This document shows, piece by piece, positions 23,098 through 64,000 of a stretch of 64,000 bases of DNA (position 1 is the stretch's first letter; each line of letters opens with the position of its first letter). The stretch lies in the sequence record MN445185.1; one strand, given 5' to 3'. The notes beneath the pieces were generated by a model. The model was not told where the DNA came from. It did not search any database and saw only the letters and a program-made list of their open reading frames with translations. The position numbers were made by a program, and so were the translations under genes.

Positions 23098-23625
23098 ATG
23101 GGATACCGTATAGATTTATCAAAAACCCCGAAACAGATTCTGGTTGAGAGAATCAATTACGTTTTTAAGTTATCGTATAGTGAAAATAACTACGAGTTTA
23201 ACCCACGTGGGGTGTGGCCGTTAACCCAAGCAGAGCGACGCGCTAAAGGTGTGGAGTCTAAAGTTGCGGCGCGCTTTGTAAATGGGGTACACGGCACTCA
23301 AGAGTTTTACCTGACTCGTGCGGACTTAAACAAGTTACTTAAAGACGTAACGGTTGAAGTCCCGAAGGGTGCGGCAGAATGGAGCCATGAATTAGTTCCG
23401 TATATTGTCGATGAGCTGGGTCTCCAGCTTGACACCTACGATATCATGGTTGAACCGATTACCCCGGAAATGGAATCGTATGAGGCGCGCTTAATCCCGC
23501 ACCATCTATCTTTCAAAGGCACGATTGCGATTACTTTTGTTGACCCAACTCCCCGTAAGCTGGCGCAGCTGGTAACTAAACGGGCACTCGACGGGTTTCG
23601 CCCAGGAGAATTTTTAAATGGCTAA
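23098..23625 (+). CDS. Virion protein, distant member of the paralog family
   Basis: S..ILVERIN..F, FYLTRADL, ELGLQL...DI and terminal LVTKRALDGF motifs shared with the 55.6-63 kb array. Confidence 0.6.
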   Translation: MGYRIDLSKTPKQILVERINYVFKLSYSENNYEFNPRGVWPLTQAERRAKGVESKVAARFVNGVHGTQEFYLTRADLNKLLKDVTVEVPKGAAEWSHELVPYIVDELGLQLDTYDIMVEPITPEMESYEARLIPHHLSFKGTIAITFVDPTPRKLAQLVTKRALDGFRPGEFLNG

Positions 23626-27891: not shown

Positions 27892-28542
27892 ATGACCCCC
27901 TTAATCAAATACCAGGAGCGAGGCATGTCTTTTGTTATTGACTTTAACCACCATCATAGTCAAACCTTGCTCGATTTAGTCAATGCTTTTAATGCTGAAA
28001 CCGTTTATACGCCCCTGACCACAGAACGTATCCGAGTGGAGAGTTATGGTCCACCGGAACCGGACGGTCGTGTAAGTGCTTTGCTGACTAATAAGAGTAA
28101 GCCAGATGACTATGTGGTTGTGCGTTACCGCAAATTGAGCTTAAATGATATAATCACGTTGAAGCCTGAACATCTCACATGGTTTGATTTGTCGAAAGGT
28201 AAACCGGCCGATTTGCGCGTATGGTCTGAACCTGCAATGGCCAGTTTTGAATCGGCGTGTGCAGAACGTGGCATCGTTGTAAGTAAGGCGTGGGAAAACC
28301 CCGCGCAATGCCACGTAGAGTACGACATCCCGACTGATCGATACGTCCTCGTCTATGAATGTGAATCATTTGTTTACGAATCGCGCACACGCATTACGCT
28401 ACCGTACCATATCGGCCAAGACTTAACCAAGACAACGTTGCCTGGTCTGGAATACGACTTGGCTGGTTTCTGGGGGCATAAGCTGTTAGAAGAAGTGACT
28501 ATCACGAAGCTTAACGGTTTTCGTTATCGTGAGTTTGTTTAA
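27892..28542 (+). CDS. Virion protein, paralog-family N-domain
   Basis: SQTLLDLVNAFN, VVRYRKLSLND, terminal TKTTLPGLEY and TITKLNGFRY motifs. Confidence 0.6.
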   Translation: MTPLIKYQERGMSFVIDFNHHHSQTLLDLVNAFNAETVYTPLTTERIRVESYGPPEPDGRVSALLTNKSKPDDYVVVRYRKLSLNDIITLKPEHLTWFDLSKGKPADLRVWSEPAMASFESACAERGIVVSKAWENPAQCHVEYDIPTDRYVLVYECESFVYESRTRITLPYHIGQDLTKTTLPGLEYDLAGFWGHKLLEEVTITKLNGFRYREFV

Positions 28543-45994: not shown

Positions 45995-46036
45995 GCTACC
46001 ACACGATCATATGTGTGGTAGCTTATTTTTTTGTTT
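45995..46036 (+). terminator. Rho-independent terminator (loop contains TATG)
   Basis: GCTACCACAC-gatcatat-GTGTGGTAGC followed by a T-tract. Confidence 0.85.
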
Positions 46037-46048
46037 CTGGAGGCGTTA

Positions 46049-46588
46049 ATGGCAGACCGCTATCAGCCCGACCTAACACTGAGTTCAAAAGCGCTAGTCT
46101 TAGCGCTTATCAATCATGACAATAATCTGTCACTTACTGATAAAGAGATTGTGATTAGGGATATTGATGCGAACGCTTCACCAGACATCATCCCGAAGAA
46201 CACACAGGCAAGCGTGGCCAAAGCACGTAAGCCAAATGGGAAAACCGTGACAGTCTATTATGACCGGTTAAGTGCGTCTACCGTGCTAGACAGTTTTCAG
46301 CCGCTATTGGTGTCCTTAGACGGAACCGAAACGGACATTCAGCAAATTGCCAGTGTGATTAACGGTTACTGCGGTACAAACTTGTCAGCAGCAGACTTAC
46401 AGTCTGCGCCAATCGTGGTCAGCGACGATTTTACCCTGGTGAATATCACTGGCGATTCCCCAGCATGGCTTGGGACATTTATCGCAACCCTGTTTACCAA
46501 AAATGAGTACGTTCTTTCAACTGACACTGACACGGTGCTGTGTCTGGATGAGAACACTGTGCTCGTACTGACTGACGAGGAAGAGTAA
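46049..46588 (+). CDS. Virion adaptor, paralog-family N-domain only
   Basis: SSKALVLALINHDN, VTVYYDRLSA, INGYCGTNLSAADL, SPAWLG; acidic tail. Confidence 0.7.
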   Translation: MADRYQPDLTLSSKALVLALINHDNNLSLTDKEIVIRDIDANASPDIIPKNTQASVAKARKPNGKTVTVYYDRLSASTVLDSFQPLLVSLDGTETDIQQIASVINGYCGTNLSAADLQSAPIVVSDDFTLVNITGDSPAWLGTFIATLFTKNEYVLSTDTDTVLCLDENTVLVLTDEEE

Positions 46589-47073
46589 TGGCCAGCCCAG
46601 TTAAAAAGCAAACATTTGAGAGCTTACCATTTTATACCGATATCACCAACGTGAAAGATGGGATGTTCTTGTTTATCAAAGATGGGAAAGCGTATCAGTA
46701 CCCGCTCGAGATGTTGGGTGTCCAGAAGGTTGCTCAGGGTGTCGTTATTCGTGATGCGGCGTATGAGTTGGAAGCGGCAGCAGCCACTGATTGGTACCTA
46801 GGACTGTCGCAACCGGAAACCGATCTCACTATTAAACCTGATGGAGTATTGGGGGCATTTCGGTACACGCTCAACCTGACTATTCTTCAGGGAACGGGAG
46901 CCAACAAAATTAACTGGCCTTCCAACGTGAAGTTCCCCCATGATGCATACCCGGTGCTGTCGTACCAGAAAGGGAAATCGGACATGATTACCCTGACTAC
47001 AATCGACGGCGGTTACACCTGGAAAGGTGGCGTTAGTGGAACAGGATATACAGAATGGGTAGAAACTCCTTAA
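46588..47073 (+). CDS. Tail-fibre-associated small protein
   Basis: LTILQGTGANKINWPSNVKF...PVLS...G..D.ITL.T.DGG.TW.G, a motif seen in phage fibre/baseplate proteins. Confidence 0.6.
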   Translation: MASPVKKQTFESLPFYTDITNVKDGMFLFIKDGKAYQYPLEMLGVQKVAQGVVIRDAAYELEAAAATDWYLGLSQPETDLTIKPDGVLGAFRYTLNLTILQGTGANKINWPSNVKFPHDAYPVLSYQKGKSDMITLTTIDGGYTWKGGVSGTGYTEWVETP

Positions 47074-50072
47074 TCGCAGTACGGACAGGGATTAACAATG
47101 CCCTGTCGATGGCCTACGGTCATCAGGACTTCGTTCGTCGAAATACCGGCTTAACTAACGACGCCCACAATGACCATTATCTGATTAACCCAGAAGGGGT
47201 GCTATCTAATAACCGGCATTTCATTGCTGACTCCATGGCAGTGTATCAACCTAATGGTGACGCCACCACAGAAGGTCAATCGTTGCTGATTATTGGGTAT
47301 TGCCACATGTACATCGCTACCAAAAACCAGATGTGGTTAGATGCGGCGATTCGTGCATGGGAAGCGTACGCTACCTACTATTACGCAGGTCAGGCCATTC
47401 CTGAGTCACCGCAACGTTGGATTTGTAACTGGCTAGTTAACGGTAAAGAACCGGTGCTGTCAGACTATCCAGTGCATCCGTCCGAGCCAACCCACGGTGG
47501 TTACAAGTGTGTACCGGTGACGTTTACGAACGGGCGTTGCCAGATACCCCAAGGCGCACCATTCTTTGGTGAATATCTGAACAATTTCTTTTCTGCGCAT
47601 CGTGGCCATCCTACTTGGGGTGCGGTTAATGCCGACGTACAGAAAATTAAGGAATCGGAAGACGGGTTAATTGACTGGTCTAAAGTCCCTGATTACTTAA
47701 TCGTCAATCCAGAGAAACCTTACGATGTAAAAGCGTGGGTGGACTGGAACACGATGCTAAACGACCCAACCGGATATACACCAATGTGGGGCGGTTCTAC
47801 CTCGAAAGGTCCGTTGTACGAGCCTGACTGGTTTGTTGTGTGGACAGGTGAGAAGGTTCAGGATGGCGAGGTCATTGAATCTGGGTTGCCTGATGCCCAG
47901 AAAGGAACCGTACAATTAAAGGACACCAGTATCAACGGTGTGTATTTGATTAACTACGCTTCCCAGGTGCCAGTAGAGCACGGCGGGTATTTGTTTGGCC
48001 GTAATGAGCCATGGCACAACCGTCCTGTGCACACACCGTTAAAAGGCTCTGTCAACCAAATGGGTAACGCGGCAGATGCGGAAGTGTGGTTTATTGATGC
48101 CTGTTATCTGCTCTGGCGTATCACAGGTGAACCGCGCTATAAAGCCGCACTAGACTCTGTGTTCTATACAGCGCATGAATACACGTATATCGATGCGAAG
48201 GACAAGTTTTTCCGACGTTCTAAGCTAGCCGAAACACCATTTACAGATGGTATCTCGTACGACTATAAATACCCCAGCACTGTTGAGGTCGCTTACAGTC
48301 GTGATGAAAATGGTGATATTGTGTTCCGTTCTGAGAAAGCTGTGCAGAACTTTATGGAACAGCAAGCCGTGCGTTTCAGGATAAACAGTCAATCGAAGTT
48401 ACGTGTGACGTATGGCGGTGTTTGCGACAACGGTGATGCGCTTGCGTGTAAAGTGATGGTGGATATCAACCCCGTTAAAGCGGATACTGAAGAAGTAAAC
48501 TGGTACGGCTGTACGCTTCCAGGATCAACATCGATGGAAGTAAAACAGCATGACATCGGTTTAGGGCATCTGGCCAGAATGACTAATCCGGCCAACGGCG
48601 AAGATTACATCATTGCCGATGCGCGAGCATGTTCAGATTACGGTGGGTGTACGTGGCAGGAGAAGTTTGAGAGCAACATCTACGATGGTCGTTCAGGCAC
48701 AATCGTAGAAGCGTTATTCCCGAACGACGATGCGGGTTTCATTATCGGTTTCTGGTTAACCGATGCCGGTGTTGCACCCCCACAGTCAATTGTCTATCGT
48801 GCCGATGGTGATTTCAACTTCCGTTTCGAAGATACCGACAAGTGGCGTTGGTGGTGGATGTTGCCCGCGACTAACGGGGAATGGAAACAGGTTATTATTC
48901 GCCCTGAAGACGCAACACTCTCGGGCTATCAACCCGACCACGATACCGACGTCGAACCAAAACCGGCTGCGCCAAACTATACAACTATCGATCGGGTAAC
49001 CATACTGCCCGATTCGGCTGTGGAGAATGCGCACTTTAGCTGGTATTGCGTAAACGATGTTCCGCCACTGTTTAATGGAGACGATGGTTGGACGTTAACG
49101 TTCCGTATTGTAATTCGGGGAGGTTCTGCATTTACGGGTAAAGTGGGCGATTGTACGATAAAAGATTACCGTCTTGACTCGCTCGCGTATTGTCCAGGAA
49201 CGATACCGTTCTCGAACATTTATTCGGAAGGAACGTATCAGCTAGGTGCATGGCACGGGATGCCGTATCCTGGCTATCAGTATCCGTTTATGTACACCAT
49301 ACACACCGATGATCGCTACAAAGTCTGGCTCTTAAATCAGATTCGGTTTATGCACGATTCACAAACCAACTACCAGGCGCAGCTAGGTGAGTTAGGTCCA
49401 GGTTGTGCGGCGTATATTTGGAACCGTTGGGATAACTACTCTTACGGCCCGGCAGATACGTGGACAACGTTCCATTGGGGAGATGGACATCCGTGGGCAG
49501 GTTATCAGCCGCGCGCGTATAACGCCGCTGCGCGTTGTTGGTACGAATTAGTTGTGCGTGGTAAAGAGGTTCCACCTGAGCTAGTAGTGTACGTTGAAAA
49601 TTGGGCTAAGTGGCTCGTAGGGTTCTTAGACCGCTTTGACAACCACACTCCGAATGAATTCCCTACAGCACCAAATAAACCGGTATGGGTAGAGAACGAT
49701 TTCACAGCACATATGTGTGCGCTCTGGATAGCAGGCAGCGCTTATGCGGCAATGGCTGGCTGTACAGTGGAAGGGTTGAGCCGTATTATGGATATGGGGA
49801 TGAAAGAGATGGGTGACAACTTCACCGTCACAGACATTCCAGGAAAAGCCATTAACGGTGCCTGGTCTCCGTGGGCAAACCCTACCACGGATAACGGTCA
49901 GGCTTTTGGGTTTTATACTGGAGAAGCGATGCGTGCAATCGGGTTGTATCTCCTCTATAAAGAACACGGCCCAGGACATGATATTTATCGTGACTTGGCA
50001 ATACCCGACCACACAACAGCTTCACTCGATATAACGTTTACTATCCCAGACGATCCGCTCGAAACTAATTAA
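47055..50072 (+). CDS. GH8-like (alpha/alpha)6 glycoside hydrolase with CBM-like insert; probable virion appendage
   Basis: ATTEGQS (E73) and NAADAEVWFIDACYLLWRITGEPRY (D341) parallel BcsZ TTSEGQS and [25 protein letters not shown]. Confidence 0.65.
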   Translation: MGRNSLIAVRTGINNALSMAYGHQDFVRRNTGLTNDAHNDHYLINPEGVLSNNRHFIADSMAVYQPNGDATTEGQSLLIIGYCHMYIATKNQMWLDAAIRAWEAYATYYYAGQAIPESPQRWICNWLVNGKEPVLSDYPVHPSEPTHGGYKCVPVTFTNGRCQIPQGAPFFGEYLNNFFSAHRGHPTWGAVNADVQKIKESEDGLIDWSKVPDYLIVNPEKPYDVKAWVDWNTMLNDPTGYTPMWGGSTSKGPLYEPDWFVVWTGEKVQDGEVIESGLPDAQKGTVQLKDTSINGVYLINYASQVPVEHGGYLFGRNEPWHNRPVHTPLKGSVNQMGNAADAEVWFIDACYLLWRITGEPRYKAALDSVFYTAHEYTYIDAKDKFFRRSKLAETPFTDGISYDYKYPSTVEVAYSRDENGDIVFRSEKAVQNFMEQQAVRFRINSQSKLRVTYGGVCDNGDALACKVMVDINPVKADTEEVNWYGCTLPGSTSMEVKQHDIGLGHLARMTNPANGEDYIIADARACSDYGGCTWQEKFESNIYDGRSGTIVEALFPNDDAGFIIGFWLTDAGVAPPQSIVYRADGDFNFRFEDTDKWRWWWMLPATNGEWKQVIIRPEDATLSGYQPDHDTDVEPKPAAPNYTTIDRVTILPDSAVENAHFSWYCVNDVPPLFNGDDGWTLTFRIVIRGGSAFTGKVGDCTIKDYRLDSLAYCPGTIPFSNIYSEGTYQLGAWHGMPYPGYQYPFMYTIHTDDRYKVWLLNQIRFMHDSQTNYQAQLGELGPGCAAYIWNRWDNYSYGPADTWTTFHWGDGHPWAGYQPRAYNAAARCWYELVVRGKEVPPELVVYVENWAKWLVGFLDRFDNHTPNEFPTAPNKPVWVENDFTAHMCALWIAGSAYAAMAGCTVEGLSRIMDMGMKEMGDNFTVTDIPGKAINGAWSPWANPTTDNGQAFGFYTGEAMRAIGLYLLYKEHGPGHDIYRDLAIPDHTTASLDITFTIPDDPLETN

Positions 50073-54661: not shown

Positions 54662-54738
54662 TTTCAGATATATATTACTTAGGTGAGAGTTAACAATTAA
54701 CTCTTATCTAATCGACCATTATCTTAAGGAGTTTTAAC
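54662..54738 (+). promoter_or_regulatory. Early promoter-hairpin-leader cassette, copy 3
   Basis: TTTCAGATATATATTACTTAGG; hairpin 54684-54706; TAATCGACCATTATCTTAAGGAG. Confidence 0.8.
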
Positions 54739-55185: not shown

Positions 55186-55246
55186 TAATAACCCGGCGGG
55201 CAAAGTCCCGCCAATTCACCCGCAATCTACAAAAAAGGAATATCCC

Positions 55247-55465
55247 ATGCGCAACCTGTTCTCCAAATCTGAAATCAAACCTGTTGTTGAAACCGCAGCC
55301 AAACGTAAGCCCGACATGATTGACCTGCTGCTGAAAATGTCTGCAGCAGAAGCCAAAGCTTTCATGAATACAATGAAAGACGACGAAAAAAAGATTGACA
55401 ATGTTGAAGTAACCTATGGTGTTAAAGACCGCCCAAAGAATAACGACCTTGTGTGGGTCTGTTAA
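55247..55465 (+). CDS. Hypothetical protein
   Basis: 72 aa, AAGGA RBS. Confidence 0.7.
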   Translation: MRNLFSKSEIKPVVETAAKRKPDMIDLLLKMSAAEAKAFMNTMKDDEKKIDNVEVTYGVKDRPKNNDLVWVC

Positions 55466-55494
55466 TCGACGATTGAGGATATAGTCGTGAAGAA

Positions 55495-55540
55495 AAGGGA
55501 GCTTCGGCTCCCCTTCTTTTTTTGTTTCCTTTTCTTTTTT
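55495..55540 (+). terminator. Rho-independent terminator
   Basis: GGGAGC-TTCG-GCTCCC followed by a long T-rich tract. Confidence 0.85.
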
Positions 55541-55562
55541 GTTTGCTCTTGTTCAGATTCTG

Positions 55563-55585
55563 GTACGCGCTACGCTTTTAATATG
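55563..55585 (+). promoter_or_regulatory. GTAC-N15-TATG late-type promoter candidate
   Basis: Upstream of the paralog array. Confidence 0.5.
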
Positions 55586-55643
55586 CTGGCAGGAGGTCTA
55601 AAAATCTTACGACCTCAATAATCCCTTAACTCGAGTTAACGCG

Positions 55644-56441
55644 ATGTCTTTTACTTCAAAACAGAATCTGCTAAAACTCATCAACGAAGAGAATAAGATA
55701 AGCCCACCGCTTACCTTTGACGATGTTGATATCGGACTGCCGGAGGTTGTGTCAGTAGACGGTCGTGATTCGGAGGTGGTACTAACCTCGAAAATGCGCG
55801 GTGATGAAGGTACGCAAGTGATTGTGGACTACCATCGTCGTCCATTAGAGGACTACCTTACAGGCGATGTTGCCTTTGGCGATGAAGATGTGCATACCAC
55901 GCACGACTTACTCGCGGCGATTAACGAGCGTTTTAATCTGTCTATCTTACCTGAGGATATCGAAGATAACCCCATTGAAGGACAGACGCACACAGTCGTT
56001 GCTGTTGAAACTTCCCACGAGTGGAGAAGTCAAGCGGTCATCGAGCTGAAACCTGCTACACCTCTGGCAGAAGTAATAACCAATACAGAGTTGAGCGGTC
56101 TTCTGTACCCGGATCACCAGGACATCCAGTTGGGTCAGGCGTATATCTATTCGCGCGACATCGATTGTAGCCACATCTCTCGTTTCCTGAGCCTCTTAGC
56201 GGTCGGTATCGAAGTAGATGACACGGCGTTAGCAATCGAACTCAACAAATGTGTTCCTGAGATTTGGGTGGCTGAAGATACCCCATCCCCGTATAACTTG
56301 CGTGGTGCTACTGTCGTATTCGACGGCGTACCTGCAGACTTACCGGGAGCAAATACGGCGTTCGCGAAAGTCGTGTCAGTGCAACTGACCGATAAATGTA
56401 CGAACTTCCAGGGCAGCCTCAACTTACACTTTAACAACTAG
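55644..56441 (+). CDS. Virion structural protein, paralog array member 1
   Basis: SKQNLLKLINEEN, VDYHRRPL, INERFNLSI..EDI, LSGLLYP, QAYIYS..ID, YNLRGATVVFDG, C.NFQGSLNLHFN. Confidence 0.8.
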   Translation: MSFTSKQNLLKLINEENKISPPLTFDDVDIGLPEVVSVDGRDSEVVLTSKMRGDEGTQVIVDYHRRPLEDYLTGDVAFGDEDVHTTHDLLAAINERFNLSILPEDIEDNPIEGQTHTVVAVETSHEWRSQAVIELKPATPLAEVITNTELSGLLYPDHQDIQLGQAYIYSRDIDCSHISRFLSLLAVGIEVDDTALAIELNKCVPEIWVAEDTPSPYNLRGATVVFDGVPADLPGANTAFAKVVSVQLTDKCTNFQGSLNLHFNN

Positions 56442-56451
56442 GAGGGTATAG

Positions 56452-57294
56452 GTGTCTATTTACGATAAGCCCTCGAAAGAGATGTTGTTAGATGCTATTA
56501 ACCGACAGAACGGATTAACGGCCAATCCACTCACATGGGAGCAGGTTGCAACTGGCTTCCCTGAGTCTGTCCAAACGCCTGGCGCTGACCGGAATACACG
56601 TGTACTCTTATACGGGTTGAACGGCAAGGGCTACAAAGGCAACGTTACGCTCGAATACGACCGTATCGAAATGGAAATTCTGTTCAGGAACGTAATACCG
56701 GTAGTCGTTGCCGACCCGGTAAATAAACTCTCTGAGTTGTTGCCGTTTCTGAATGCGAAATACGGCTTGTCTTTAGTTGCCGATGATATCGTTGACCAGT
56801 CAGTAAAAGATTTGGGAGAAAGCTGGTTAATCGATGTGACTATTAAGCCCGGTTGCTTGGCCTGGCAAGGTGGTTTCCGTTTACGCTTTGCGAAGTTCTT
56901 CCCGAACCTGGCGGATGTGGTGACGGATGTTGACCTCAGCGCAATTATCGCACCGTTCGTGGTTGCTAGTAAACCGCAGGCTGAATATGTGGCGTATGGT
57001 TACGATTGGACTGAACTGCAAAAACAGTTCACTACCGATTGGGCTTACAACCGTGCAATCACTGCAGCGGATGTTGAGTTGTTGAATGAAGTGGTGCCAT
57101 TAAAGTTTGCATATGTGACGGGGGCGAATGCGCAACCTGAACAAATTGCACTCCAAGGTGCACGATTTATGGGGATAACTTCAGTCACACCGAACGATAG
57201 TTACAACCCCGATTATCAGCGTGTGGCGATTATCAAGCTAGCTGCGGACAGCAACTACGCCGGTAATCTCATCCTTCATTATCTCCCGATATAA
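56452..57294 (+). CDS. Virion structural protein, paralog array member 2
   Basis: GYKGNVTLEYDRI, LNAKYGLSLVADDI, YAGNLILHY. Confidence 0.8.
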   Translation: MSIYDKPSKEMLLDAINRQNGLTANPLTWEQVATGFPESVQTPGADRNTRVLLYGLNGKGYKGNVTLEYDRIEMEILFRNVIPVVVADPVNKLSELLPFLNAKYGLSLVADDIVDQSVKDLGESWLIDVTIKPGCLAWQGGFRLRFAKFFPNLADVVTDVDLSAIIAPFVVASKPQAEYVAYGYDWTELQKQFTTDWAYNRAITAADVELLNEVVPLKFAYVTGANAQPEQIALQGARFMGITSVTPNDSYNPDYQRVAIIKLAADSNYAGNLILHYLPI

Positions 57295-57304
57295 GGATTT
57301 TGAC

Positions 57305-58150
57305 ATGCCACTTTTAGCCACAGCTGAAAAGATTATTATCGCGGAGGTTAACGTCGAAAACAATCTCGACTTAAAAGTCGAGGATGTTGTTTTTGGTGTC
57401 CCTGCGATTCCAACGTCTGACGAAGACTTGGCAAAAGCTAACGGTCACAACGCGATGGTGCGTATTCAGGCATTGGCCACGGCTAATGCTATCGGTGCCA
57501 CTACCGTGTACTACGATCGTGTTGACTTCGCAGACATGTTTACCGATCCGGACGGGATTCAACCTTTACGTGTTCCTGCACGTCTCGATGCTGTTTACCA
57601 GATGCATGACGTGGTCGGGTTAATTAACCAGTATTACGGTCTCAGCCTTAAACCTGCAGATGTGGTGAATACCGAAATCGACAGGAAGACATGGCGTGTG
57701 GATCTGATTGCCACGCCCTCTTCTTTAGGTTGGATAGGGCAACAACAGGTACAGCTGTTACCAGGCGATGCGTTGCTTCCTGCAAACTTCGAACCCTTAA
57801 CAGTGATGCCTTACGAGTATCCGTATTTCAACATCAAGGTCGGTCAAGGTGCAGTTTATTCGTATCCCTGGCGCTTTGATAATTTCGCGGAGGAATTTCA
57901 ACGACTAGGTGCTGCGATAACCACAGAACGTCTGGCACAGATTCTCAAAACGGTCACCGGTGATAACTGGACAACATACCGTAACCCTATCGACTTTAAC
58001 CTTCGTGAAGCCGTCGTCGTCTATAACGGGCGTAACAAAGCGGAATTACCAACCAACCCAGCAGTCGACAACGTGCTGATTGTGGAGCTGTCGTTGTACT
58101 GTCTGAATTTTGGCGGGCGTTTGTATTTGCATTACAACGACCCTGATTAA
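57305..58150 (+). CDS. Virion structural protein, paralog array member 3
   Basis: TTVYYDRVDF, INQYYGLSL, SLGWIG, FNLREAVVVYNG, CLNFGGRLYLHYN. Confidence 0.8.
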   Translation: MPLLATAEKIIIAEVNVENNLDLKVEDVVFGVPAIPTSDEDLAKANGHNAMVRIQALATANAIGATTVYYDRVDFADMFTDPDGIQPLRVPARLDAVYQMHDVVGLINQYYGLSLKPADVVNTEIDRKTWRVDLIATPSSLGWIGQQQVQLLPGDALLPANFEPLTVMPYEYPYFNIKVGQGAVYSYPWRFDNFAEEFQRLGAAITTERLAQILKTVTGDNWTTYRNPIDFNLREAVVVYNGRNKAELPTNPAVDNVLIVELSLYCLNFGGRLYLHYNDPD

Positions 58151-58171
58151 TCCTGAGTAAAGGAAGTAAGA

Positions 58172-59083
58172 ATGAAACCTTTAAACAAAACGTCCGATAA
58201 GCTGGTTCTGGATTTTATTAATGAGAAAAACCCAGACGCAGAACTGGAACTTTCTAAAATAACGCTCGGCACACCGACCCCTATTACCGATGAAGGTGCT
58301 GATCGCAATACCAGCATGACCCTGACTGCGAAAAAGAACTCCGGGTACATCGGTACTCAGGACGTGACTTATAATCGCCTGGAAGGCGGTGCGCTGTTCC
58401 GTAATGTAACCGCATACCTCGACGTTAAACTGCCGAAAACCACCACCGACCTGCTGACGACCCTGAACACCCAATACGGATTGAAGCTGACCGAAGACGA
58501 TATCGTTCCGGCGGCTATTCCGGAAAATACCAACCCGCCGCTGACTAACCCGAACGATCCGGACCCAGCACCGGTTGACCACGTCATTACCTTCAAAGAA
58601 GACTGCTACGCTTATCTGGGCAGCATCCCGGTTAAAATCGGTGCTAAGCCTCAGGTTGGTGAACGTCTGAGTCTGGTGGTAACACAAACCAAGCTCGACG
58701 GCTTGGTTTACCCAGATGGTCCAAGCGAAGCGAAGGGTCAGGGCTACATCTACTCTTACGGTGTAGACTGCACAGCAATCGCAGCATTCCTGAAAGTACA
58801 GGCGAAAGGTGTTATCGCTGGCGACTCTGCATTCCCGGTTGAGCTGAATAAAGTTGTGCCGGAACTGTGGGTTGCATCTGATGAGCCTGCGGATTATAAC
58901 CTGAAAGGCGCTAACGTGTTGTACGTTGGTTCTACTACTGACGATGGCACTGCTTCAGGCGACGAACCTAAGAAACCGGTTGAAGGTGCAAACACTGCTT
59001 ACAACCAGGTTCTGCTGCTGCAGCTGGATGACACTCTGTGCACCAACTTCCAGGGTATCATGTACCTGCACTTTAATGCCTAA
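58172..59083 (+). CDS. Virion structural protein, paralog array member 4
   Basis: GYIGTQDVTYNRL, LNTQYGLKL, LDGLVYP, YNLKGANVLY, CTNFQGIMYLHFN; highly optimised codons. Confidence 0.8.
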   Translation: MKPLNKTSDKLVLDFINEKNPDAELELSKITLGTPTPITDEGADRNTSMTLTAKKNSGYIGTQDVTYNRLEGGALFRNVTAYLDVKLPKTTTDLLTTLNTQYGLKLTEDDIVPAAIPENTNPPLTNPNDPDPAPVDHVITFKEDCYAYLGSIPVKIGAKPQVGERLSLVVTQTKLDGLVYPDGPSEAKGQGYIYSYGVDCTAIAAFLKVQAKGVIAGDSAFPVELNKVVPELWVASDEPADYNLKGANVLYVGSTTDDGTASGDEPKKPVEGANTAYNQVLLLQLDDTLCTNFQGIMYLHFNA

Positions 59084-59092
59084 TTAGGCCTC

Positions 59093-59136
59093 GCTGGGAG
59101 GAGGAAATCCTCCTCCTGGCTACTCCTTTCTTTTTT
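59093..59136 (+). terminator. Rho-independent terminator (internal to array)
   Basis: GGAGGAGG-AAAT-CCTCCTCC followed by a T-rich tract. Confidence 0.7.
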
Positions 59137-59152
59137 GGCCGAGGAGGCTATT

Positions 59153-59992
59153 ATGGCTTTATATAGTCTGTCTCAGCGACAATATCTGTACGATGCGATT
59201 AATGCCGAAAACCCGGATGCTGTGCTACCGATGGGTTTAGACAATGCTATCATCGGCACGCCGAAAGCAATCACACCGACAGCAAGCGGTGCCAATACTG
59301 AGATTATCATTCGTGGTCGTCAAGGTCGTGGCTATATCGGTCCTCAGACGTTCCGTTATAAGCGCTTGTCGCTGAACGACTTATTTAAGAACATGACACC
59401 TCAGGTAACTGCACCGAATGCCTACGGTTGGTTGAACGTGGAGTCGAAACGTACTGCGTTTGCGCAGAACCTGAACGGTCGTTATGGATTAAACCTGGTT
59501 GCAGATGATATCCCAGAACAATACGTTTATCTGAACGTAAACAACACGATGCGTATTAACGCTAGCTGTATCCAATACACTGGCAGCATCACCTTTATGT
59601 CTATCCGGGGTAAGAATAGCCTCGAAGACCTCGTGGTAAACGACATCTTGTTGGCTTTGAACCACCCTGCAGCAGCAAGCACTGGTAAGAAATACATGGG
59701 CTTCTTGACGTACGGGGAAGACTTTACTGACGAAGTGCAGGTTATGGCCTCGTTTAAGAACGGGCGAATGGACGTAGGAAGTAACTTTGATTTGGGTTAC
59801 ACGTCCAATCTGATGGCCACATTGGTCGCACGTGGGGTACCGTCGTTTGATCCGACGAACTGCACAATTACCCGCTACAAAACGAGTGAGTTGGCGACCG
59901 CCAATAAAGCGTACGATAACGTATTGCTGATTACCGGCATTCAGAACGACCCGAAAGTAATCGGCGAGTGTATGTTGCACTACAACAACTAG
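59153..59992 (+). CDS. Virion structural protein, paralog array member 5
   Basis: GYIGPQTFRYKRL, LNGRYGLNLVADDI, ANKAYDNVL, CMLHYN. Confidence 0.8.
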   Translation: MALYSLSQRQYLYDAINAENPDAVLPMGLDNAIIGTPKAITPTASGANTEIIIRGRQGRGYIGPQTFRYKRLSLNDLFKNMTPQVTAPNAYGWLNVESKRTAFAQNLNGRYGLNLVADDIPEQYVYLNVNNTMRINASCIQYTGSITFMSIRGKNSLEDLVVNDILLALNHPAAASTGKKYMGFLTYGEDFTDEVQVMASFKNGRMDVGSNFDLGYTSNLMATLVARGVPSFDPTNCTITRYKTSELATANKAYDNVLLITGIQNDPKVIGECMLHYNN

Positions 59993-60002
59993 GAATTAGC
60001 GA

Positions 60003-60890
60003 ATGGCTATTTATCAACCTTCTAAAGACGTCCTGTTGGCAGCAGTGAACGCACAGAACTCGCTTGCTGTTAAGATGACTGACATCATCTGGTCCTCGCC
60101 AAAGGACATCCGTGGTACGGAGAAGGAAACGCTGACTAACCGTAACACGCAAATTAAAATTACGGCAGATGGGGTAACGGGCTCTACCTGGTCGGGTAAG
60201 AAAAATGTCTTCTACAACCGCATGAAAGTCGAAGACTTGTTAGTGCTGATCGGTGACACGTTGGCGATCGGCCCATCCAACGAAACCTTGTATGCGGCCA
60301 TTCCTGGACTGAACCAACGTTACGGTTTTGTTCTGGAAGAAGCTGACCTGCAGGACGCAGATATCGAATGGAACGGTGATAAGACCGAAGGAACTGTGCG
60401 CGTTGTTGCACATCCGGAGTCTATCGGTTGGGTTGGACAGGCGACATTTAAAGTCGTGAAAGGTGATGAGTCGTTAGTCTCTGCAGTCACCACTAACGTC
60501 CTGACCGGTCTGAAATACCCGAACGGTCAGATGGGTTCCGAAAATGTTACTGCGGTCATTGCAGAGGTTTATTCCTACCCGTACAACTTCACCAAATACC
60601 GTGATACTCTGCTGGCATACACGCCAGGTATTCTGTCCGGACAGCCGTTGACGGATATGGTTAACATGCTGAAATATATTACGGGTACGGCATGGGTAGC
60701 GACCACCTCCGCTTCCTACGGTTTGGCGGGTGCGGAGGTTATCAGCGTTGGTCTGAATGACCCTGTTGCAATGCCGACAAACGCGAAGTACAAGTATGCG
60801 CTGGTGTTGAAACTGCCTGTTACCTGTACCACCATCGTCGGAACGTTGTATCTCCAGTTCAACGATCTGGACGATCCAAGCGAGGTATAA
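60003..60890 (+). CDS. Virion structural protein, paralog array member 6
   Basis: PSKDVLLAAVNAQN, VFYNRM, LNQRYG, SIGWVG, LTGLKYP, GTLYLQFN. Confidence 0.8.
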   Translation: MAIYQPSKDVLLAAVNAQNSLAVKMTDIIWSSPKDIRGTEKETLTNRNTQIKITADGVTGSTWSGKKNVFYNRMKVEDLLVLIGDTLAIGPSNETLYAAIPGLNQRYGFVLEEADLQDADIEWNGDKTEGTVRVVAHPESIGWVGQATFKVVKGDESLVSAVTTNVLTGLKYPNGQMGSENVTAVIAEVYSYPYNFTKYRDTLLAYTPGILSGQPLTDMVNMLKYITGTAWVATTSASYGLAGAEVISVGLNDPVAMPTNAKYKYALVLKLPVTCTTIVGTLYLQFNDLDDPSEV

Positions 60891-60893
60891 TTG

Positions 60894-61721
60894 ATGATCA
60901 ACTATGCTAAGCCGTCAAACGAGTTGGTCTTTGACCTCATTAACCGGGATAACCCAAACCTACCTATTAAAGCGTCGCCGGCAAACTGCTACGTGGAGAA
61001 AGTGACGCAGGTTCCCGTTAATGCAGCTTCCAACAACCGCAATACGTCGGCACGCTTGCGCGGTATTCAGGGTTCCGGATTTCGAGACGCAATCACCGTT
61101 TACTACGACCGTGTGAACTTAGCGCGGTTATTGCCGTGGGGTCCTTCTGTTCAGGCGCAGTTCGTCACGTTTGACGCGCCCAACCTCCACTCAGCCTTTT
61201 CGGTGCTCTTGGATACTTACGGAGTAAACTTCTCTGCAATCGATATCTATAACCTCCCACTGGCGGGTCCCAATACCCCAAATTACACCAATACACAGAA
61301 CATCGTAGCGCTATCGACATCTCCGGCTTATATCGGTTCTGCGACGTTGCGTTATAACCGTGGTTTACCGGTACTAGATACTTCGGTGAAAACGGATGTC
61401 TTGAATGCGATTCAAGAGCCTATTTCACCGTCTCTCGGTAAGAAGTGTATTGATTTGTTGACGTACGGTATTGACTTTACCGCGTATAAAAACCTACTGA
61501 CAGTAGATGCTTCTGGCCTACCGCAGTGGGCTGGTTTGCGTAAGGTGTTGGATGACCTGGGTATTCCGAACTACGCGGGGCCACTGAACAGTAACACCGT
61601 TCAGGATGTGCCGACATCCACCGCTCAGTTCGCTAACAAATCGTACGACCGCGTGGTTGTCCAAACGGGTATCGATGAGGAAGGCGTGAAAGGCGTGGCG
61701 TACTACCACTATAACAGCTAA
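60894..61721 (+). CDS. Virion structural protein, paralog array member 7
   Basis: PSNELVFDLINRDN, TVYYDRVNL, YGIDFT, ANKSYDRVV, AYYHYN. Confidence 0.8.
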   Translation: MINYAKPSNELVFDLINRDNPNLPIKASPANCYVEKVTQVPVNAASNNRNTSARLRGIQGSGFRDAITVYYDRVNLARLLPWGPSVQAQFVTFDAPNLHSAFSVLLDTYGVNFSAIDIYNLPLAGPNTPNYTNTQNIVALSTSPAYIGSATLRYNRGLPVLDTSVKTDVLNAIQEPISPSLGKKCIDLLTYGIDFTAYKNLLTVDASGLPQWAGLRKVLDDLGIPNYAGPLNSNTVQDVPTSTAQFANKSYDRVVVQTGIDEEGVKGVAYYHYNS

Positions 61722-61726
61722 GTGTA

Positions 61727-61751
61727 GGGGCTCTTCGGAGCCCCCTCTTTT
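61727..61751 (+). terminator. Rho-independent terminator
   Basis: GGGGCTC-TTCG-GAGCCCC followed by a short T-tract. Confidence 0.75.
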
Positions 61752-61768
61752 GGCGATGCGGAGTCCCT

Positions 61769-63181
61769 ATGCTATTTTACTCGAAGGAGTCGGCACTGCT
61801 TGTATACGACCAAGTCAATCGGGATAACCCTGATTTAGTTGTTAAGCTGACGCCGGCTATCGCTGCTTTAACCAGTGGCCCAACTTCAGTTACGTTAAAC
61901 CAACGTAACACCAAAGCTGTTTTCACCGGGTATCCAGGGACAGGTGTACAAGGTAATGTTACCGTGTACTACGACCGGATTAACCTGGCCTCTTTATTTA
62001 ATTTTGTGCCGACTGTGGCTATCAAAGATACAGTCTTAACGGTACGAGACGCGCTACCTGCAATAAACAACGCTTTGGGGCTTACATTAGTTGCTTCTGA
62101 TTTGCAGTCACCTGACGCAAGTTTACCTAAACCGAGCGCTTCGCCGCAGACGTTGAAATTAAATATCTCAGGTAATTGCCCTGCGTTTACAGGCAGCTTA
62201 ACGATACGTTATACCGTCCCGAGCGGTGCAATTTACCCCGATTCTGGACCTGGCCCTAAAACGTTGCTGCAAGGTAACACTATCGCGGGTTATTTCGGAA
62301 CAACCACAATTGCAGAGTTGTTTACACACTCTCAACTTCTTAATGCCACTATATCGGCCGGTGCGTTACCACCGGTACATTCTGGTGCCGAAGGTTGGTA
62401 CAAGTTCTTTTACCAGGGTAGGGTTATTTACCTTCCGATCAGTCCTGTCGCTAGCTCCATCTCCTGGAATACGTTATATACAAACGGACTCGTTTACGGA
62501 ACAGATGATAATGGTAAATACCCTGCGGCGACGCCCGTTAACCAGGGACGCATCATTAGCTTTACAGGCGCAGACAACAAAAGGTTTTACTTCCGTGTTC
62601 GTCTACCTAGTGCCGGGAAAGACCCATACGTCAGCGGCACCCCAACTGCCGCTGAGTTAGCAGGTAGTGAGTTTGAGATGTTCAACTTTCTGTATAATGG
62701 AACGTGGGACAAACCGATTAACAGTTACTGGACGCTGTTCTGTTTATTGAAAGATACACTGAAGACCAACGTCGCCAATCATCGCATGGCGACGTTGTCT
62801 GGAGCAAGTTGGACAAACTTAGAAAAATCATCGAGTGCGGGCAACTACTACTGGTTCCCGGTGCTGGAGTTGGTGGATAAGTCCACAGTTACCTTGGGTT
62901 TAGAAGATATCCATGGTGCGGTAGATTACAGTCTCCAACCGTGCAGCGTGTCCGCAGAAAACACATTTAGTCTCAAGCCGTTAGTGCTCGGTAATCCGGA
63001 TACTACCGATTTCGAACCGGTAGTTGTTACTTCAGAAAACAGTTTCGCACTGCATCCGCCTGCTTTAATGCTGCCGAAGACAGTCGACTTCCAACCTATT
63101 GCGGCTACCGCTGAAATGTATACGCCCCCTGACAAGACAACGTTAACGTCTCTTAACGGTGAACTGGACGGCTTTAAGTAG
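61769..63181 (+). CDS. Tail fibre/receptor-binding candidate: paralog N-domain plus a different C-domain
   Basis: N-domain motifs (VTVYYDRINL, INNALGL) fused to GYFG...WYKF...SW..LY..GLVYG...WFPVLEL domain. Confidence 0.7.
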   Translation: MLFYSKESALLVYDQVNRDNPDLVVKLTPAIAALTSGPTSVTLNQRNTKAVFTGYPGTGVQGNVTVYYDRINLASLFNFVPTVAIKDTVLTVRDALPAINNALGLTLVASDLQSPDASLPKPSASPQTLKLNISGNCPAFTGSLTIRYTVPSGAIYPDSGPGPKTLLQGNTIAGYFGTTTIAELFTHSQLLNATISAGALPPVHSGAEGWYKFFYQGRVIYLPISPVASSISWNTLYTNGLVYGTDDNGKYPAATPVNQGRIISFTGADNKRFYFRVRLPSAGKDPYVSGTPTAAELAGSEFEMFNFLYNGTWDKPINSYWTLFCLLKDTLKTNVANHRMATLSGASWTNLEKSSSAGNYYWFPVLELVDKSTVTLGLEDIHGAVDYSLQPCSVSAENTFSLKPLVLGNPDTTDFEPVVVTSENSFALHPPALMLPKTVDFQPIAATAEMYTPPDKTTLTSLNGELDGFK

Positions 63182-63192: not shown

Positions 63193-64000
63193 ATGTCTTT
63201 TACTTTGCGTTGGAAAAATCCAAACGTAATCCCTACGGTAGTAAAAATCTACCGTGACGTTAAAGATATCACACCAAGCGCTTTGCCTGAACCGATTGCA
63301 ACGCTCTCAAATGGCGAGACAGAATGGCGTGATGCCACCGCCAAACCAGGCGCAATCTATTATTACCTTCTAACGGTAACCGCCAACGGTAAAACAGTAG
63401 CGTCGTCTAGCCAGAAATATACTGTTGAGGTAAAACGCGGGATAGGCCCAATGACTATTCTAAACGGTAACGACCGTTTAGGGTTTATGGGTGAGGTTCC
63501 TTACGACGAACAATGGCTTCCGTCGCAAATGCCACCTGCATTTTTGGCGATGTTCCCTAATCTATTAACCGATCGCGTGGCGTTGTATAAATTTACCCGA
63601 AACGGGAAGATCTATTACATGCTATCTAACACGTCGCAGTTCCCGAATACGCCTGTGGACTGGGCTTCCCTCTATCAAGCTGGTTTAGTCTATGGTACGG
63701 GCGATGCTGGCCCAGAGAACGGCCATGGAACGCTACCGGCCACTCCACAAGACGCTAAGATAGTCCACAAAGGGGATACGTACATCATGCGTCTTCCTCG
63801 CGGCCTGACGATGTCTAGCGAGCCTCCTGCGTATCCTTTCGTAGCTGACTATAATGGGAAAACCCATGATGAAATCGCTTCTCTAACCAACCCGTGTGAG
63901 TATAACGATTTACTTTACACGATGGTTAACGAGGTGCCGTGGAAACAGCGTTGGGCTAACTGGGCAACGAACAGTTATACTTTTCTGGGGCAGGGTACTT
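63193..64000 (+). CDS. Virion protein (partial, runs off the window): FN3-like N-domain plus the C-domain family of 61769
   Basis: LRWKNP...KIYR...YYY.LTV (FN3-like); GFMGEV...LYKF...W.SLYQAGLVYGTG; open to the window end. Confidence 0.7.
   Translation, partial: MSFTLRWKNPNVIPTVVKIYRDVKDITPSALPEPIATLSNGETEWRDATAKPGAIYYYLLTVTANGKTVASSSQKYTVEVKRGIGPMTILNGNDRLGFMGEVPYDEQWLPSQMPPAFLAMFPNLLTDRVALYKFTRNGKIYYMLSNTSQFPNTPVDWASLYQAGLVYGTGDAGPENGHGTLPATPQDAKIVHKGDTYIMRLPRGLTMSSEPPAYPFVADYNGKTHDEIASLTNPCEYNDLLYTMVNEVPWKQRWANWATNSYTFLGQGT

What the first reader, a model, noticed from the sequence alone, without database searches (positions are those of the whole stretch)
55644..63181. One 'socket' N-domain reused across an 8-gene tandem array and three dispersed genes
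Seen: seven adjacent ~265-303-aa paralogs share an N-domain (SxxLLxxxINxxN; GYxGxxTxxYxRxxL; LNxxYGLxL..DI; SxxWxG), and most share a C-domain ending (C.NF.)G.L.LH[YF]N. The same N-domain is fused to a different C-domain (61769), stands alone before the GH8 module (46049), and is weakly present at 23098 and 27892. Inference: this is a plug-in scaffold that docks interchangeable payloads (lectin-like heads, enzyme) on the baseplate or tail. A virion paralog family is known in SPN3US-like phages, but to my knowledge the modular docking role is not established.
Basis: partly seen in the sequence, partly recalled or inferred. Interest (0 to 1): 0.65.

Follow-up and report, generated by a model that had tools for sequence, protein, structure and literature searches.

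The report
Jumbo-phage DUF7941 virion fibre paralogs
This is the already described 'paralog family B' (Pfam DUF7941) of SPN3US-like giant phages, whose shared N-terminal module probably links the proteins into chains carrying binding domains. Published proteomics puts this array with the phage head, not the baseplate.

Summary
The window is Escherichia phage vB_EcoM_EC001 (100% identity), 98% identical here to Salmonella phage SPN3US. The array 55644-63181 corresponds to SPN3US gp138-gp145.

Seven adjacent genes match Pfam DUF7941 over their full length. The gene at 61769 and the dispersed genes at 46031 and 23098 carry only its N-terminal half. The gene at 27892 is a true distant member (profile-profile probability 96%).

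None of this is new. The family was described in 2016-17 as 'Paralog family B'. An April 2026 preprint on phage Goslar already proposes that the DUF7941 N-domain forms head-to-tail filaments carrying carbohydrate-binding or enzyme payloads.

What I add:
- A short L[DN]G[FL] motif lies in the linker of the abundant paralog (gp141 homologue). It also lies at the extreme C-terminus of the N-domain-only and payload-bearing members.
- The payload at 61769 has a C-type-lectin-like fold.
- The seven paralogs form seven orthogroups kept in the same gene order across four phage genera.

gp138-145 stay with tail-less heads at the same ratio as the capsid protein. Only gp91, gp122 and gp237 behave as tail proteins.

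I could not test binding because the complex predictor was unavailable.

The parts
55644..56441 (+). SPN3US gp138 homologue. Full-length DUF7941: N-domain, conserved linker, C-domain.
   Evidence: PF25613 E 7e-68, profile 5-276. Orthogroup support 100/99.
56452..57294 (+). gp139 homologue, full-length DUF7941. GTG start here; SPN3US annotates a start further downstream.
   Evidence: PF25613 E 5.5e-71. Orthogroup 100/100.
57305..58150 (+). gp140 homologue, full-length DUF7941.
   Evidence: PF25613 E 5e-79. Orthogroup 100/100.
58172..59083 (+). gp141 homologue, the abundant full-length member. Predicted N-domain aa 1-160, linker 161-185, C-domain 186-303.
   Evidence: PF25613 E 7e-85. AF2 mean pLDDT 88, dipping to 63-78 in the linker. 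N-domain against 9XQD_0: Z 9.9, 137 residues aligned. SPN3US gp141 gave 2239 PSM in wild type.
58658..58723 (+). Linker segment of the gp141 homologue (aa 163-184) holding the L[DN]G[FL]-x-Y-P motif. Proposed 'plug'.
   Evidence: Most conserved segment among orthologues: 81% identity against 66% for the N-domain and 64% for the C-domain. Invariant or near-invariant L166, L175, Y180, P181.
59153..59992 (+). gp142 homologue, full-length DUF7941. An upstream TTG at 59135 is also open.
   Evidence: PF25613 E 2e-79. Orthogroup 100/99.
60003..60890 (+). gp143 homologue, full-length DUF7941 (mid abundance in SPN3US).
   Evidence: PF25613 E 4e-81. Orthogroup 99/99.
60891..61721 (+). gp144 homologue, full-length DUF7941.
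   Evidence: PF25613 E 6e-87. Orthogroup 100/100.
61769..62218 (+). gp145 homologue, N-domain (aa 1-150).
   Evidence: PF25613 profile 1-153, E 3e-31. 9XQD_0 Z 8.7.
62240..62884 (+). gp145 homologue, payload domain (aa 158-372), C-type-lectin-like fold. Shared with gp146-153.
   Evidence: AF2 pLDDT 80-95. VIA-align hits: Lcl C-terminal domain Z 6.9, Bd2740 tip 6.5, PvdO 6.4, TvpA 6.0, NK receptors about 5, Mtd 4.9; most of the 50 rows are C-type-lectin-like or formylglycine-enzyme-like folds. BLASTP to gp147/150/153, E 1e-16 to 1e-19.
62885..63181 (+). gp145 homologue, disordered Pro-rich tail (aa 373-470) ending in a conserved L[DN]G[FL] C-terminus (last 16 aa = 63131-63178), then the stop codon.
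   Evidence: pLDDT below 50 for aa 380-470. The last 20 aa are 63% conserved against 47-48% for the tail and payload. Motif enrichment.
63193..63999 (+). gp146 homologue, cut by the window end. No N-domain; shares the payload domain of gp145.
   Evidence: phrog_1062 E 5e-50 and phrog_3589 E 1e-9. BLASTP gp145 against gp146, E 3e-8.
46031..46588 (+). gp122 homologue: N-domain only (likely ATG start at 46049). Hypervariable between EC001 and SPN3US.
   Evidence: PF25613 profile 3-151, E 1.5e-18. 49% aa identity to SPN3US gp122 against about 97% in the flanks. Seen in wild-type virions only, 22 against 0 PSM.
46588..47073 (+). gp123 homologue: small protein whose C-terminal part matches tail-fibre families. 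Swapped together with gp122.
   Evidence: phrog_9017 'tail fiber protein' E 8e-32. 41% identity to SPN3US gp123. Tail fraction, 55 against 0 PSM.
47055..50072 (+). gp124 homologue: 1005-aa tail protein.
   Evidence: phrog_2871 'tail protein'. No Pfam, NCBIfam or PDB sequence match. Atlas gives leads only, scores below 0.85, to GH9/GH8/C5-epimerase clusters. Relatives at 43-60% identity across much of the listing, on contigs mostly far shorter than a jumbo-phage genome and some on bacterial chromosomes, none with DUF7941. Tail fraction.
23098..23625 (+). gp83 homologue: N-domain plus a C-terminal L[DN]G[FL] tail, encoded between two tail genes.
   Evidence: PF25613 E 3.5e-14. phrog_2935 E 2e-59. 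Motif. SPN3US gp83 is in the head fraction, ratio 1.20.
27892..28542 (+). gp91 homologue (likely start at 27925): distant N-domain member with two plug-like motifs at its C-terminus.
   Evidence: Own HMM E 1.4e-4. hhalign A2 against A5: probability 96%, E 4e-9. In Erwinia phage Kwan it is fused to a Pfam-detectable DUF7941 N-domain. Tail fraction, 124 against 0 PSM.

Best explanation
The array encodes eight members of the chimallivirus-specific DUF7941 family, which is SPN3US 'Paralog family B'. These are abundant virion proteins not reported among the substrates of the prohead protease.

**Architecture.** Each protein starts with a globular N-domain of about 150 residues, the 'socket'. Seven proteins follow it with a short, highly conserved linker; its literal L[DN]G[FL]-x-Y-P form is in the gp141 homologue, and the paralogs carry diverged versions (the 'plug'). 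A C-domain of about 120 residues with no known fold comes last.

**Proposed mechanism (inferred).** The plug of one protomer binds the N-domain of the next. The proteins then chain head to tail into flexible heteropolymeric filaments.

**The gene at 61769.** It keeps the socket, inserts a C-type-lectin-like payload, and carries an L[DN]G[FL] plug at the very end of a disordered tail. It could therefore sit within a chain rather than only cap it. The N-domain-only proteins gp83 and gp91 end in the same plug; gp122 does not.

**Role of the N-domain.** It is a polymerisation and docking module among family members. It is not a baseplate adaptor as such.

**Location.** In this phage lineage the array proteins travel with the head in tail-less mutants. 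A few relatives (gp91, gp122, gp237) travel with the tail.

**Function (inferred).** The likely function is adhesion to host surface glycans.

**Shown:** family membership, domain layout, fold match to phiKZ gp127, motif distribution, and ancient fixed paralogy.
**Taken from the literature:** virion fraction, and filament formation by Goslar gp22.
**Inferred:** plug-socket binding in these proteins, exterior location, and an adhesive role.
For: **Membership and domain boundaries.**

**Structure.**
- gp141 homologue: two confident domains joined by a less confident linker.
- gp145 homologue: N-domain, payload, then a tail with pLDDT below 50.
- Both N-domains hit only PDB 9XQD chain 0, phiKZ gp127: Foldseek E 7e-6 and 5e-5, Z 9.9 and 8.7.

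**The plug.**
- The linker is the most conserved segment of gp141 orthologues, 81%.
- L[DN]G[FL] lies within the last 25 residues of only 7 of 465 SPN3US ORFs of 100 aa or more. All 7 are N-domain proteins.
- A comparable linker motif follows the N-domain in Goslar gp22/23/31/33/34.

**Literature.**
- AF3 head-to-tail models, filaments of purified gp22 by negative-stain EM, and N-terminal DUF7941 fused to carbohydrate-binding, hydrolase or LRR domains.
- Head-fraction ratios of 1.2-1.6 for gp83 and gp138-145, 0.89-1.67 for gp146-155 and 1.23 for gp160, against 0.06 or less for tail proteins.

**Payloads.** C-type-lectin-like fold in gp145. A Gp38 adhesin domain in SPN3US gp155, E 7e-18.

**Evolution.** Seven orthogroups kept in the same gene order across four genera.
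Against: - The plug-socket contact in these proteins rests on analogy with Goslar and phiKZ AlphaFold 3 models from an un-reviewed preprint.
- An HMM of the short plug is not significant outside the seven full-length paralogs; gp237 scores E 0.1-0.4.
- The L[DN]G[FL] pattern was defined after looking at the sequences, and four of the seven carriers share descent.
- The plug could bind its own N-domain in cis.
- Head-fraction proteins could be inside the capsid, in which case an adhesive role would be wrong.
- C-type-lectin-like matches are only Z 5-7.
- The one experimentally placed relative is on the baseplate, not the head.
Confidence: 0.5

Rival explanations
1. This is the model of the reader and of the Goslar preprint. 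All DUF7941 proteins, the array included, are anchored on the peripheral baseplate. They radiate from it as a 'fibre cloud' that presents interchangeable payloads.
For: - The phiKZ gp127 N-domain is modelled at the end of the gp139 band in the outer peripheral baseplate (9XQD). The preprint fits a gp126-gp127 dimer into neighbouring density.
- In Goslar and phiKZ the genes lie among baseplate genes.
- In this window gp83 lies between two tail genes, and gp122 lies next to tail proteins gp123 and gp124.
Against: - In SPN3US, tail-less heads from two different mutants keep gp138-155, gp160 and gp83. In the quantified one, 255(am107), they are at the same normalised level as the major capsid protein, while baseplate and fibre proteins drop 15-fold to more than 200-fold.
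- Goslar maps show no density for these proteins.
- phiKZ gp127 was placed by docking a predicted model into a 4.4 A map.
Confidence: 0.2
2. The array proteins are internal head proteins, packaged with the DNA and possibly ejected, as the SPN3US authors tentatively labelled gp141 and gp160 ('Head ejection?'). The N-domain would then mediate packing inside the capsid.
For: - Head-fraction behaviour identical to the capsid protein.
- High abundance of gp141 and gp160.
- No external density reported on the SPN3US capsid at about 30 A.
- Goslar copy numbers rival those of the inner-body proteins.
Against: - They are not among the proteins cut by the prohead protease.
- Fused domains are of extracellular binding types: C-type-lectin-like, Gp38 adhesin, and carbohydrate-binding, hydrolase or LRR domains in Goslar.
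- One relative is seen on the outside of the tail.
- Family members gp91 and gp237 are tail proteins.
Confidence: 0.2
3. The paralogs are monomeric decoration or accessory virion proteins. The shared N-domain is only inherited, with no docking or polymerising function, and the conserved linker is an intramolecular element.
For: - No interaction was tested here.
- The linker could pack in cis.
- The fold has no characterised relatives apart from phiKZ gp127.
Against: - Purified Goslar gp22 forms filaments.
- The linker is more conserved than either domain.
- The same short motif recurs at the extreme C-terminus after unrelated payloads and long disordered tails. An intramolecular packing element would not be expected there.
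Confidence: 0.1

Closest known systems
SPN3US 'Paralog family B' (gp83, gp138-154, gp160, gp237, candidate gp122; Thomas 2016, Ali 2017, Scheuch 2023)
   Same: The window genes are the 98%-identical orthologues of gp138-145, gp83 and gp122. The tandem array and the virion association are the same.
   Different: Nothing differs biologically. Those papers defined the family by PSI-BLAST and called it head proteins of unknown function. They did not describe the domain split, the linker or C-terminal motif, the lectin-like payload, or gp91 as a member.
Goslar DUF7941 proteins (gp22, gp23, gp31, gp33, gp34, gp86, gp91-93, gp161) and the proposed 'DUF7941 fibre cloud' (bioRxiv 10.64898/2026.04.21.720040)
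   Same: - Same Pfam family and the same N-domain, linker, C-domain layout.
- My N- and C-domain HMMs hit gp22/31/33/34 at E 1e-9 to 6e-28.
- One abundant full-length member plus one abundant N-domain-only member.
- N-domain fused to binding payloads.
   Different: - This lineage has more members (17-18 against 10) and an ordered seven-gene array.
- The payload here is C-type-lectin-like, with the plug moved to the far C-terminus.
- The preprint places the fibres on the baseplate and does not cite the SPN3US data that place them with heads.
phiKZ gp127 (with gp126) in the outer peripheral baseplate, PDB 9XQD
   Same: Sequence match E 8e-22 across the distal N-domain, linker and C-domain (profile 64-278). 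The N-domain fold superposes at Z 8.7-9.9.
   Different: Only six copies per virion are modelled in phiKZ, and only residues 1-150. phiKZ has 2-3 members. The SPN3US orthologues of this array are not in the tail fraction.
Strand-donating polymers such as chaperone-usher pili. This is a mechanistic analogy only, from general knowledge.
   Same: A short extension of one subunit would dock on the globular domain of the next, giving thin flexible fibres with a specialised adhesin subunit.
   Different: There is no sequence or fold relationship. No chaperone or usher is involved. The docking geometry is unknown and was not tested here.
C-type-lectin-fold receptor-binding tips (Bordetella phage Mtd, DGR variable proteins TvpA and TaqVP, Bdellovibrio Bd2740 fibre tip, Legionella Lcl)
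   Same: The payload domain aa 158-372 of the 61769 protein aligns to them at Z 4.7-6.9 over 104-138 residues.
   Different: Sequence identity is 6-13%. There is no sign of a diversity-generating retroelement, and ligand-binding residues were not examined. The fold match alone shows no function.

Membership tests
Pfam PF25613 (DUF7941) / SPN3US Paralog family B | Sequence match above the curated cut-off (27 bits) | tested here: met
   229-292 bits for the seven full-length proteins. 109 bits for 61769, 68 for 46031 and 53 for 23098. 27892 is reached only by profile-profile comparison (probability 96%).
Pfam PF25613 (DUF7941) / SPN3US Paralog family B | N-terminal globular domain, flexible linker, C-terminal globular domain | tested here: met
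   The AF2 model of 58172-59080 has pLDDT above 85 in residues 1-160 and, apart from one short dip, in 186-303, with a dip to 63-78 in 161-185 and pTM 0.55.
Pfam PF25613 (DUF7941) / SPN3US Paralog family B | N-domain fold as in phiKZ gp127 (9XQD) | tested here: met
   Z 9.9 (137 aa, rmsd 3.1) and Z 8.7 (132 aa, rmsd 3.4). It is the only Foldseek hit with E below 0.001.
Pfam PF25613 (DUF7941) / SPN3US Paralog family B | Restricted to phiKZ-like jumbo phages (chimalliviruses) | tested here: met
   tblastn found 129 phage records; every listed record is 197-322 kb, from Erwinia, Salmonella, Serratia, Klebsiella and similar hosts. Zero of 14 control genomes matched. Metagenomes and bacterial genomes were not scanned.
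Pfam PF25613 (DUF7941) / SPN3US Paralog family B | Head-to-tail self-association through the linker and N-domain | not testable with these tools
Only indirect support exists: conservation and motif distribution.
   This is not my experiment. Published SPN3US data read give head/wild-type ratios of 1.22-1.56 for gp138-145, against 0.004-0.07 for tail proteins. The feature is met only for gp91, gp237 and gp123/124, and apparently gp122.
C-type lectin-like domain (payload of 61769) | Characteristic alpha/beta fold with long loop region | tested here: inconclusive
   Most of the 50 best VIA-align rows are C-type-lectin-like or formylglycine-enzyme-like folds covering residues 158-371, but Z is only 4.3-6.9. 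No Pfam match.
C-type lectin-like domain (payload of 61769) | Ligand or Ca-binding residues | not tested
   No Pfam hit at E up to 1. No NCBIfam hit. No PDB sequence hit. The Atlas gives only sub-threshold leads (0.75-0.83) to GH9, GH8 and C5-epimerase clusters. The fold was not predicted.

The most novel reading that the evidence does not exclude
In SPN3US-like phages most DUF7941 filament mass is carried on the outside of the capsid or neck, not the baseplate. This would be a head-borne adhesive fibre coat built from an ordered set of seven ancient paralogs.

- Binding modules would be spliced between an N-terminal socket and a C-terminal L[DN]G[FL] plug, so that they can sit anywhere along a chain.
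- A separate trio of family members (gp91, gp122, gp237) would reside in the tail.
- The gp122-gp123 pair would serve as a swappable host-range cassette.
Probability: 0.25. Interest if true: 0.6.

Novelty: already known. Interest (0 to 1): 0.3.

Why it matters
The genes themselves are ordinary for this phage group and were already catalogued.

What matters is an unaddressed contradiction in the literature. Careful proteomics puts about twenty DUF7941 paralogs with tail-less heads of SPN3US. The 2026 structural work on phiKZ and Goslar puts the family on the peripheral baseplate as a host-recognition fibre cloud, without citing that proteomics.

These proteins are among the most abundant in the virion: hundreds to thousands of copies by the Goslar estimates, with gp141 and gp160 the most abundant in SPN3US. 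Where they sit and what they bind therefore affects how jumbo phages find their hosts, and how host range might be read from genomes of therapeutic candidates.

The socket, plug and payload layout described here gives simple constructs and mutants with which to settle the question.

Tried and rejected
No verdict.
- **Own assembly**: not held. I used the SPN3US record G001 instead.
- **PDB sequence searches** with the 61769 and 47055 proteins: nothing.
- **ESM Atlas** on the 61769 payload: only unnamed viral clusters.
- **ESM Atlas** on 47055-50072: sub-threshold glycanase leads only.
- **GH8 label**: rejected as unverified.
- **'Lectin-like head' for the shared C-domain**: rejected, best Z 2.6.
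- **Short HMM of the linker**: finds the seven paralogs, but nothing else in SPN3US is significant; gp237 E 0.1-0.4, and one unrelated 161-aa ORF E 0.25-2. The C-terminal plug idea therefore rests on a post hoc pattern count.
- **Script with typed motif segments**: I repeated the step from alignment columns by reference.
- **Fusion of gp124 relatives to DUF7941**: none of the 120 listed homologues carries it.
- **Isoelectric points** (4.1-6.7): do not discriminate inside from outside the capsid.
- **Goslar collar filaments**: made of gp126 and unrelated to this family.

Full report
**Identity of the window.** The region 55644-63181 is 100% identical to Escherichia phage vB_EcoM_EC001. It is 98.2% identical to Salmonella phage SPN3US (genus Seoulvirus), where it corresponds to SPN3US_0138 to SPN3US_0145. 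The window's own assembly is not held, so I used the SPN3US record as handle G001.

**The observation.**
- Eight + strand ORFs lie 0-69 nt apart.
- Seven proteins of 265-303 aa match Pfam PF25613 (DUF7941) over the whole 276-position profile, E 7e-68 to 6e-87. The 470-aa protein at 61769 matches only positions 1-153, E 3e-31.
- The same N-half occurs at 46031-46588 (E 1.5e-18) and at 23098-23625 (E 3.5e-14).
- I built an HMM from the eight N-domains and ran it over all 488 stop-to-stop ORFs of the window. It finds these ten genes and then 27892-28542 at E 1.4e-4; the next hit is at E 0.8.
- With six homologues of the 27892 protein from other phages, a profile-profile comparison gives probability 96%, E 4e-9, over 154 columns.
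- In Erwinia phage Kwan that protein is fused to an N-domain that Pfam detects.

**What is already known.**
- The family is 'Paralog family B' of SPN3US: gp83, gp138-154, gp160/161 and gp237, with gp122 as a candidate. It was reported as an unusually large paralog family of head proteins of unknown function.
- The profile of my alignment hits one solved chain, phiKZ gp127 in PDB 9XQD, at E 8e-22. That entry is the outer peripheral baseplate of phiKZ. One gp127 per 'star lobe' ends a band of gp139 dimers, and the protein was placed by docking a predicted model into a 4.4 A map.
- A bioRxiv preprint of April 2026 on phage Goslar describes DUF7941 as N-domain, disordered linker and C-domain. It lists ten Goslar members, three of them with an N-terminal DUF7941 module followed by carbohydrate-binding, glycoside-hydrolase or LRR domains.
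- The same preprint reports AlphaFold 3 head-to-tail oligomers and filaments of purified gp22. It estimates about 580 and 2140 copies of gp22 and gp23 per virion, and it proposes a baseplate-anchored 'DUF7941 fibre cloud'.
- It is the only paper in the searched library that discusses the family's function under that name.

**Structure.**
- The model of the 58172 protein (the gp141 homologue, 31-row alignment) has mean pLDDT 88. It shows two confident domains and a dip to 63-78 in residues 161-185.
- The model of the 61769 protein has a confident N-domain, a confident second domain at residues 155-372, and a tail of about 90 residues below pLDDT 50.
- Both N-domains match only 9XQD chain 0: Foldseek E 7e-6 and 5e-5, VIA-align Z 9.9 and 8.7.
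- The common C-domain has no match above Z 2.6. 'Lectin-like head' is not supported for it.
- The second domain of the 61769 protein aligns mostly to C-type-lectin-like folds. These include the Legionella Lcl C-terminal domain (Z 6.9), a Bdellovibrio fibre tip (6.5), PvdO (6.4), the variable proteins TvpA and TaqVP, NK-cell receptors, and the Bordetella phage tropism determinant Mtd (4.9). The scores are middling, but the hits agree with each other.

**The rest of the family in SPN3US.**
- Seventeen places match PF25613.
- After gp145 come three repeats of a three-gene cassette: gp145/146/147, gp148/149/150 and gp151/152/153. The first gene of each has the N-domain, and all nine share the lectin-like domain.
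- gp155 has two tandem N-domains followed by a Gp38 tail-fibre adhesin domain, PF05268, E 7e-18.

**A recurring short motif.**
- In gp141 orthologues the linker is the most conserved segment: 81% mean identity, against 66% for the N-domain and 64% for the C-domain. Invariant or near-invariant positions lie around a hydrophobic-x-G-hydrophobic-x-Y-P core.
- In its literal L[DN]G[FL] form this core stands at the extreme C-terminus of gp83, gp91, gp145, gp148, gp151, gp160 and gp237.
- Of 465 SPN3US ORFs of 100 aa or more, seven have L[DN]G[FL] within the last 25 residues. All seven are N-domain proteins.
- In gp145 orthologues the last 20 residues are better conserved (63%) than the payload (48%) or the tail (47%).
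- Goslar gp22/23/31/33/34 carry a comparable motif after their N-domains.
- Caveats: the pattern was chosen after inspecting the sequences, and four of the seven carriers are related by descent. A short HMM of the linker is not significant outside the seven full-length paralogs.
- My reading is that this motif is the element that docks on a neighbour's N-domain. In payload-bearing members the payload would then be inserted between socket and plug. This is inference.

**Evolution.**
- A maximum-likelihood tree of 35 full-length members gives seven orthogroups with 99-100% support. Each holds one protein from EC001, Stratton (Erskinevirus), Kwan (Wellingtonvirus) and EarlPhillipIV (Derbicusvirus), in the same gene order.
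- The seven-fold duplication is therefore older than these genera. Every copy has been kept, which argues for distinct rather than redundant roles.
- Member counts by Pfam are 17, 14, 12, 14, 10 and about 6 for SPN3US, Stratton, Kwan, EarlPhillipIV, Goslar and Vibrio phage pVa-21.

**Where the proteins sit.**
- Table S2 of the 2023 SPN3US study compares doubly CsCl-purified wild-type virions with tail-less heads of a tail-tube amber mutant.

| Protein | Normalised ratio, heads / wild type |
|---|---|
| Major capsid protein (gp75) | 1.39 |
| gp138-145 | 1.22-1.56 |
| gp146-155 | 0.89-1.67 |
| gp160 | 1.23 |
| gp83 | 1.20 |
| Sheath, tube, tape measure, baseplate and fibre proteins | 0.004-0.07 |

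- An independent tail-less mutant gave the same assignment in 2016.
- In contrast, gp237 (ratio 0.06), gp91 (124 against 0 spectra), gp123 (55 against 0) and gp124 (530 against 20) are tail proteins. gp122 was seen only in wild type (22 against 0).
- The uniform capsid-like ratios argue for stable association with heads rather than chance co-purification. They do not tell inside from outside.
- The Goslar preprint does not mention SPN3US, so the conflict is unaddressed.

**Verdict on mechanism.**
- I consider it most likely (about 0.5) that the N-domain is a polymerisation module among family members. On this view the array builds flexible heteropolymers bearing binding domains, and in this lineage they remain with the head.
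- Rivals: a purely baseplate-anchored cloud (0.2), internal head proteins (0.2), and non-interacting decoration proteins (0.1).

**Side claims.** The 1005-aa protein at 47055-50072 is a tail protein. It has relatives at 43-60% identity across much of the listing, on contigs mostly far shorter than a jumbo-phage genome and some on bacterial chromosomes, and none is fused to DUF7941. GH8 could not be confirmed.

**Novelty.** The feature is already known. The additions here are modest refinements plus a literature conflict that can be tested directly.

Noticed in passing
window 46117-47093 (gp122 C-terminal part and gp123): This is the largest stretch of the window with no megablast match to SPN3US; a few shorter gaps also occur (31, 33, 44 and 54 kb). 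gp122 is 49% and gp123 41% identical at protein level, while the flanks are 95-98% identical in DNA, and the first 30 residues of gp122 are nearly unchanged. It looks like a swapped cassette of tail-fraction proteins, a candidate host-range determinant between an E. coli isolate and a Salmonella isolate.
   Followed up: partly
window 47055-50072: The 1005-aa tail protein has hundreds of relatives at 43-60% identity on contigs mostly far shorter than a jumbo-phage genome and in bacterial chromosomes (Pseudomonas, Salmonella, Shewanella, Acinetobacter). This suggests a widely exchanged tail module rather than a jumbo-phage invention. It has no Pfam family.
   Followed up: partly
L020:11770-13947 (SPN3US gp155, beyond the window end): Two tandem DUF7941 N-domains are followed by a Gp38 tail-fibre adhesin domain (PF05268, E 7e-18). 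Yet the protein is in the head fraction in published proteomics (ratio 0.89).
   Followed up: partly
L020:119-10257 (SPN3US gp145-gp153; the window holds only gp145 and part of gp146): A three-gene cassette (N-domain plus lectin-like payload, a 330-aa protein and a 300-aa protein) is repeated three times in tandem. The six proteins without an N-domain end in a conserved hydrophobic-E-L-V/I terminus. In gp145 the same motif marks the end of the payload domain.
   Followed up: partly
L038:172-858 and W02:C1:92966-93448 (Erwinia phage Kwan gp110): The homologue of the 27892 protein is 361 aa here. It continues into a second, Pfam-detectable DUF7941 N-domain, a natural fusion that ties the distant member to the family.
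   Followed up: yes
window 20895-24505: The gp83 homologue (N-domain plus plug; head fraction in SPN3US) is encoded between two tail-fraction proteins. These are gp82 (731 aa, weak hit to baseplate wedge protein 53) and gp84 (DUF7208). Gene context and virion fraction disagree.
   Followed up: no
window 10266-12590: Two long ORFs overlap almost completely on opposite strands: 715 aa on the - strand and 766 aa on the + strand. I did not examine which one is the gene.
   Followed up: no
window 53269-55644: This is the least conserved flank relative to SPN3US, 95-96% identical with short unaligned gaps. It lies just upstream of the array and includes a stretch of about 460 nt (55186-55643) with no ORF of 80 aa or more on either strand.
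   Followed up: no
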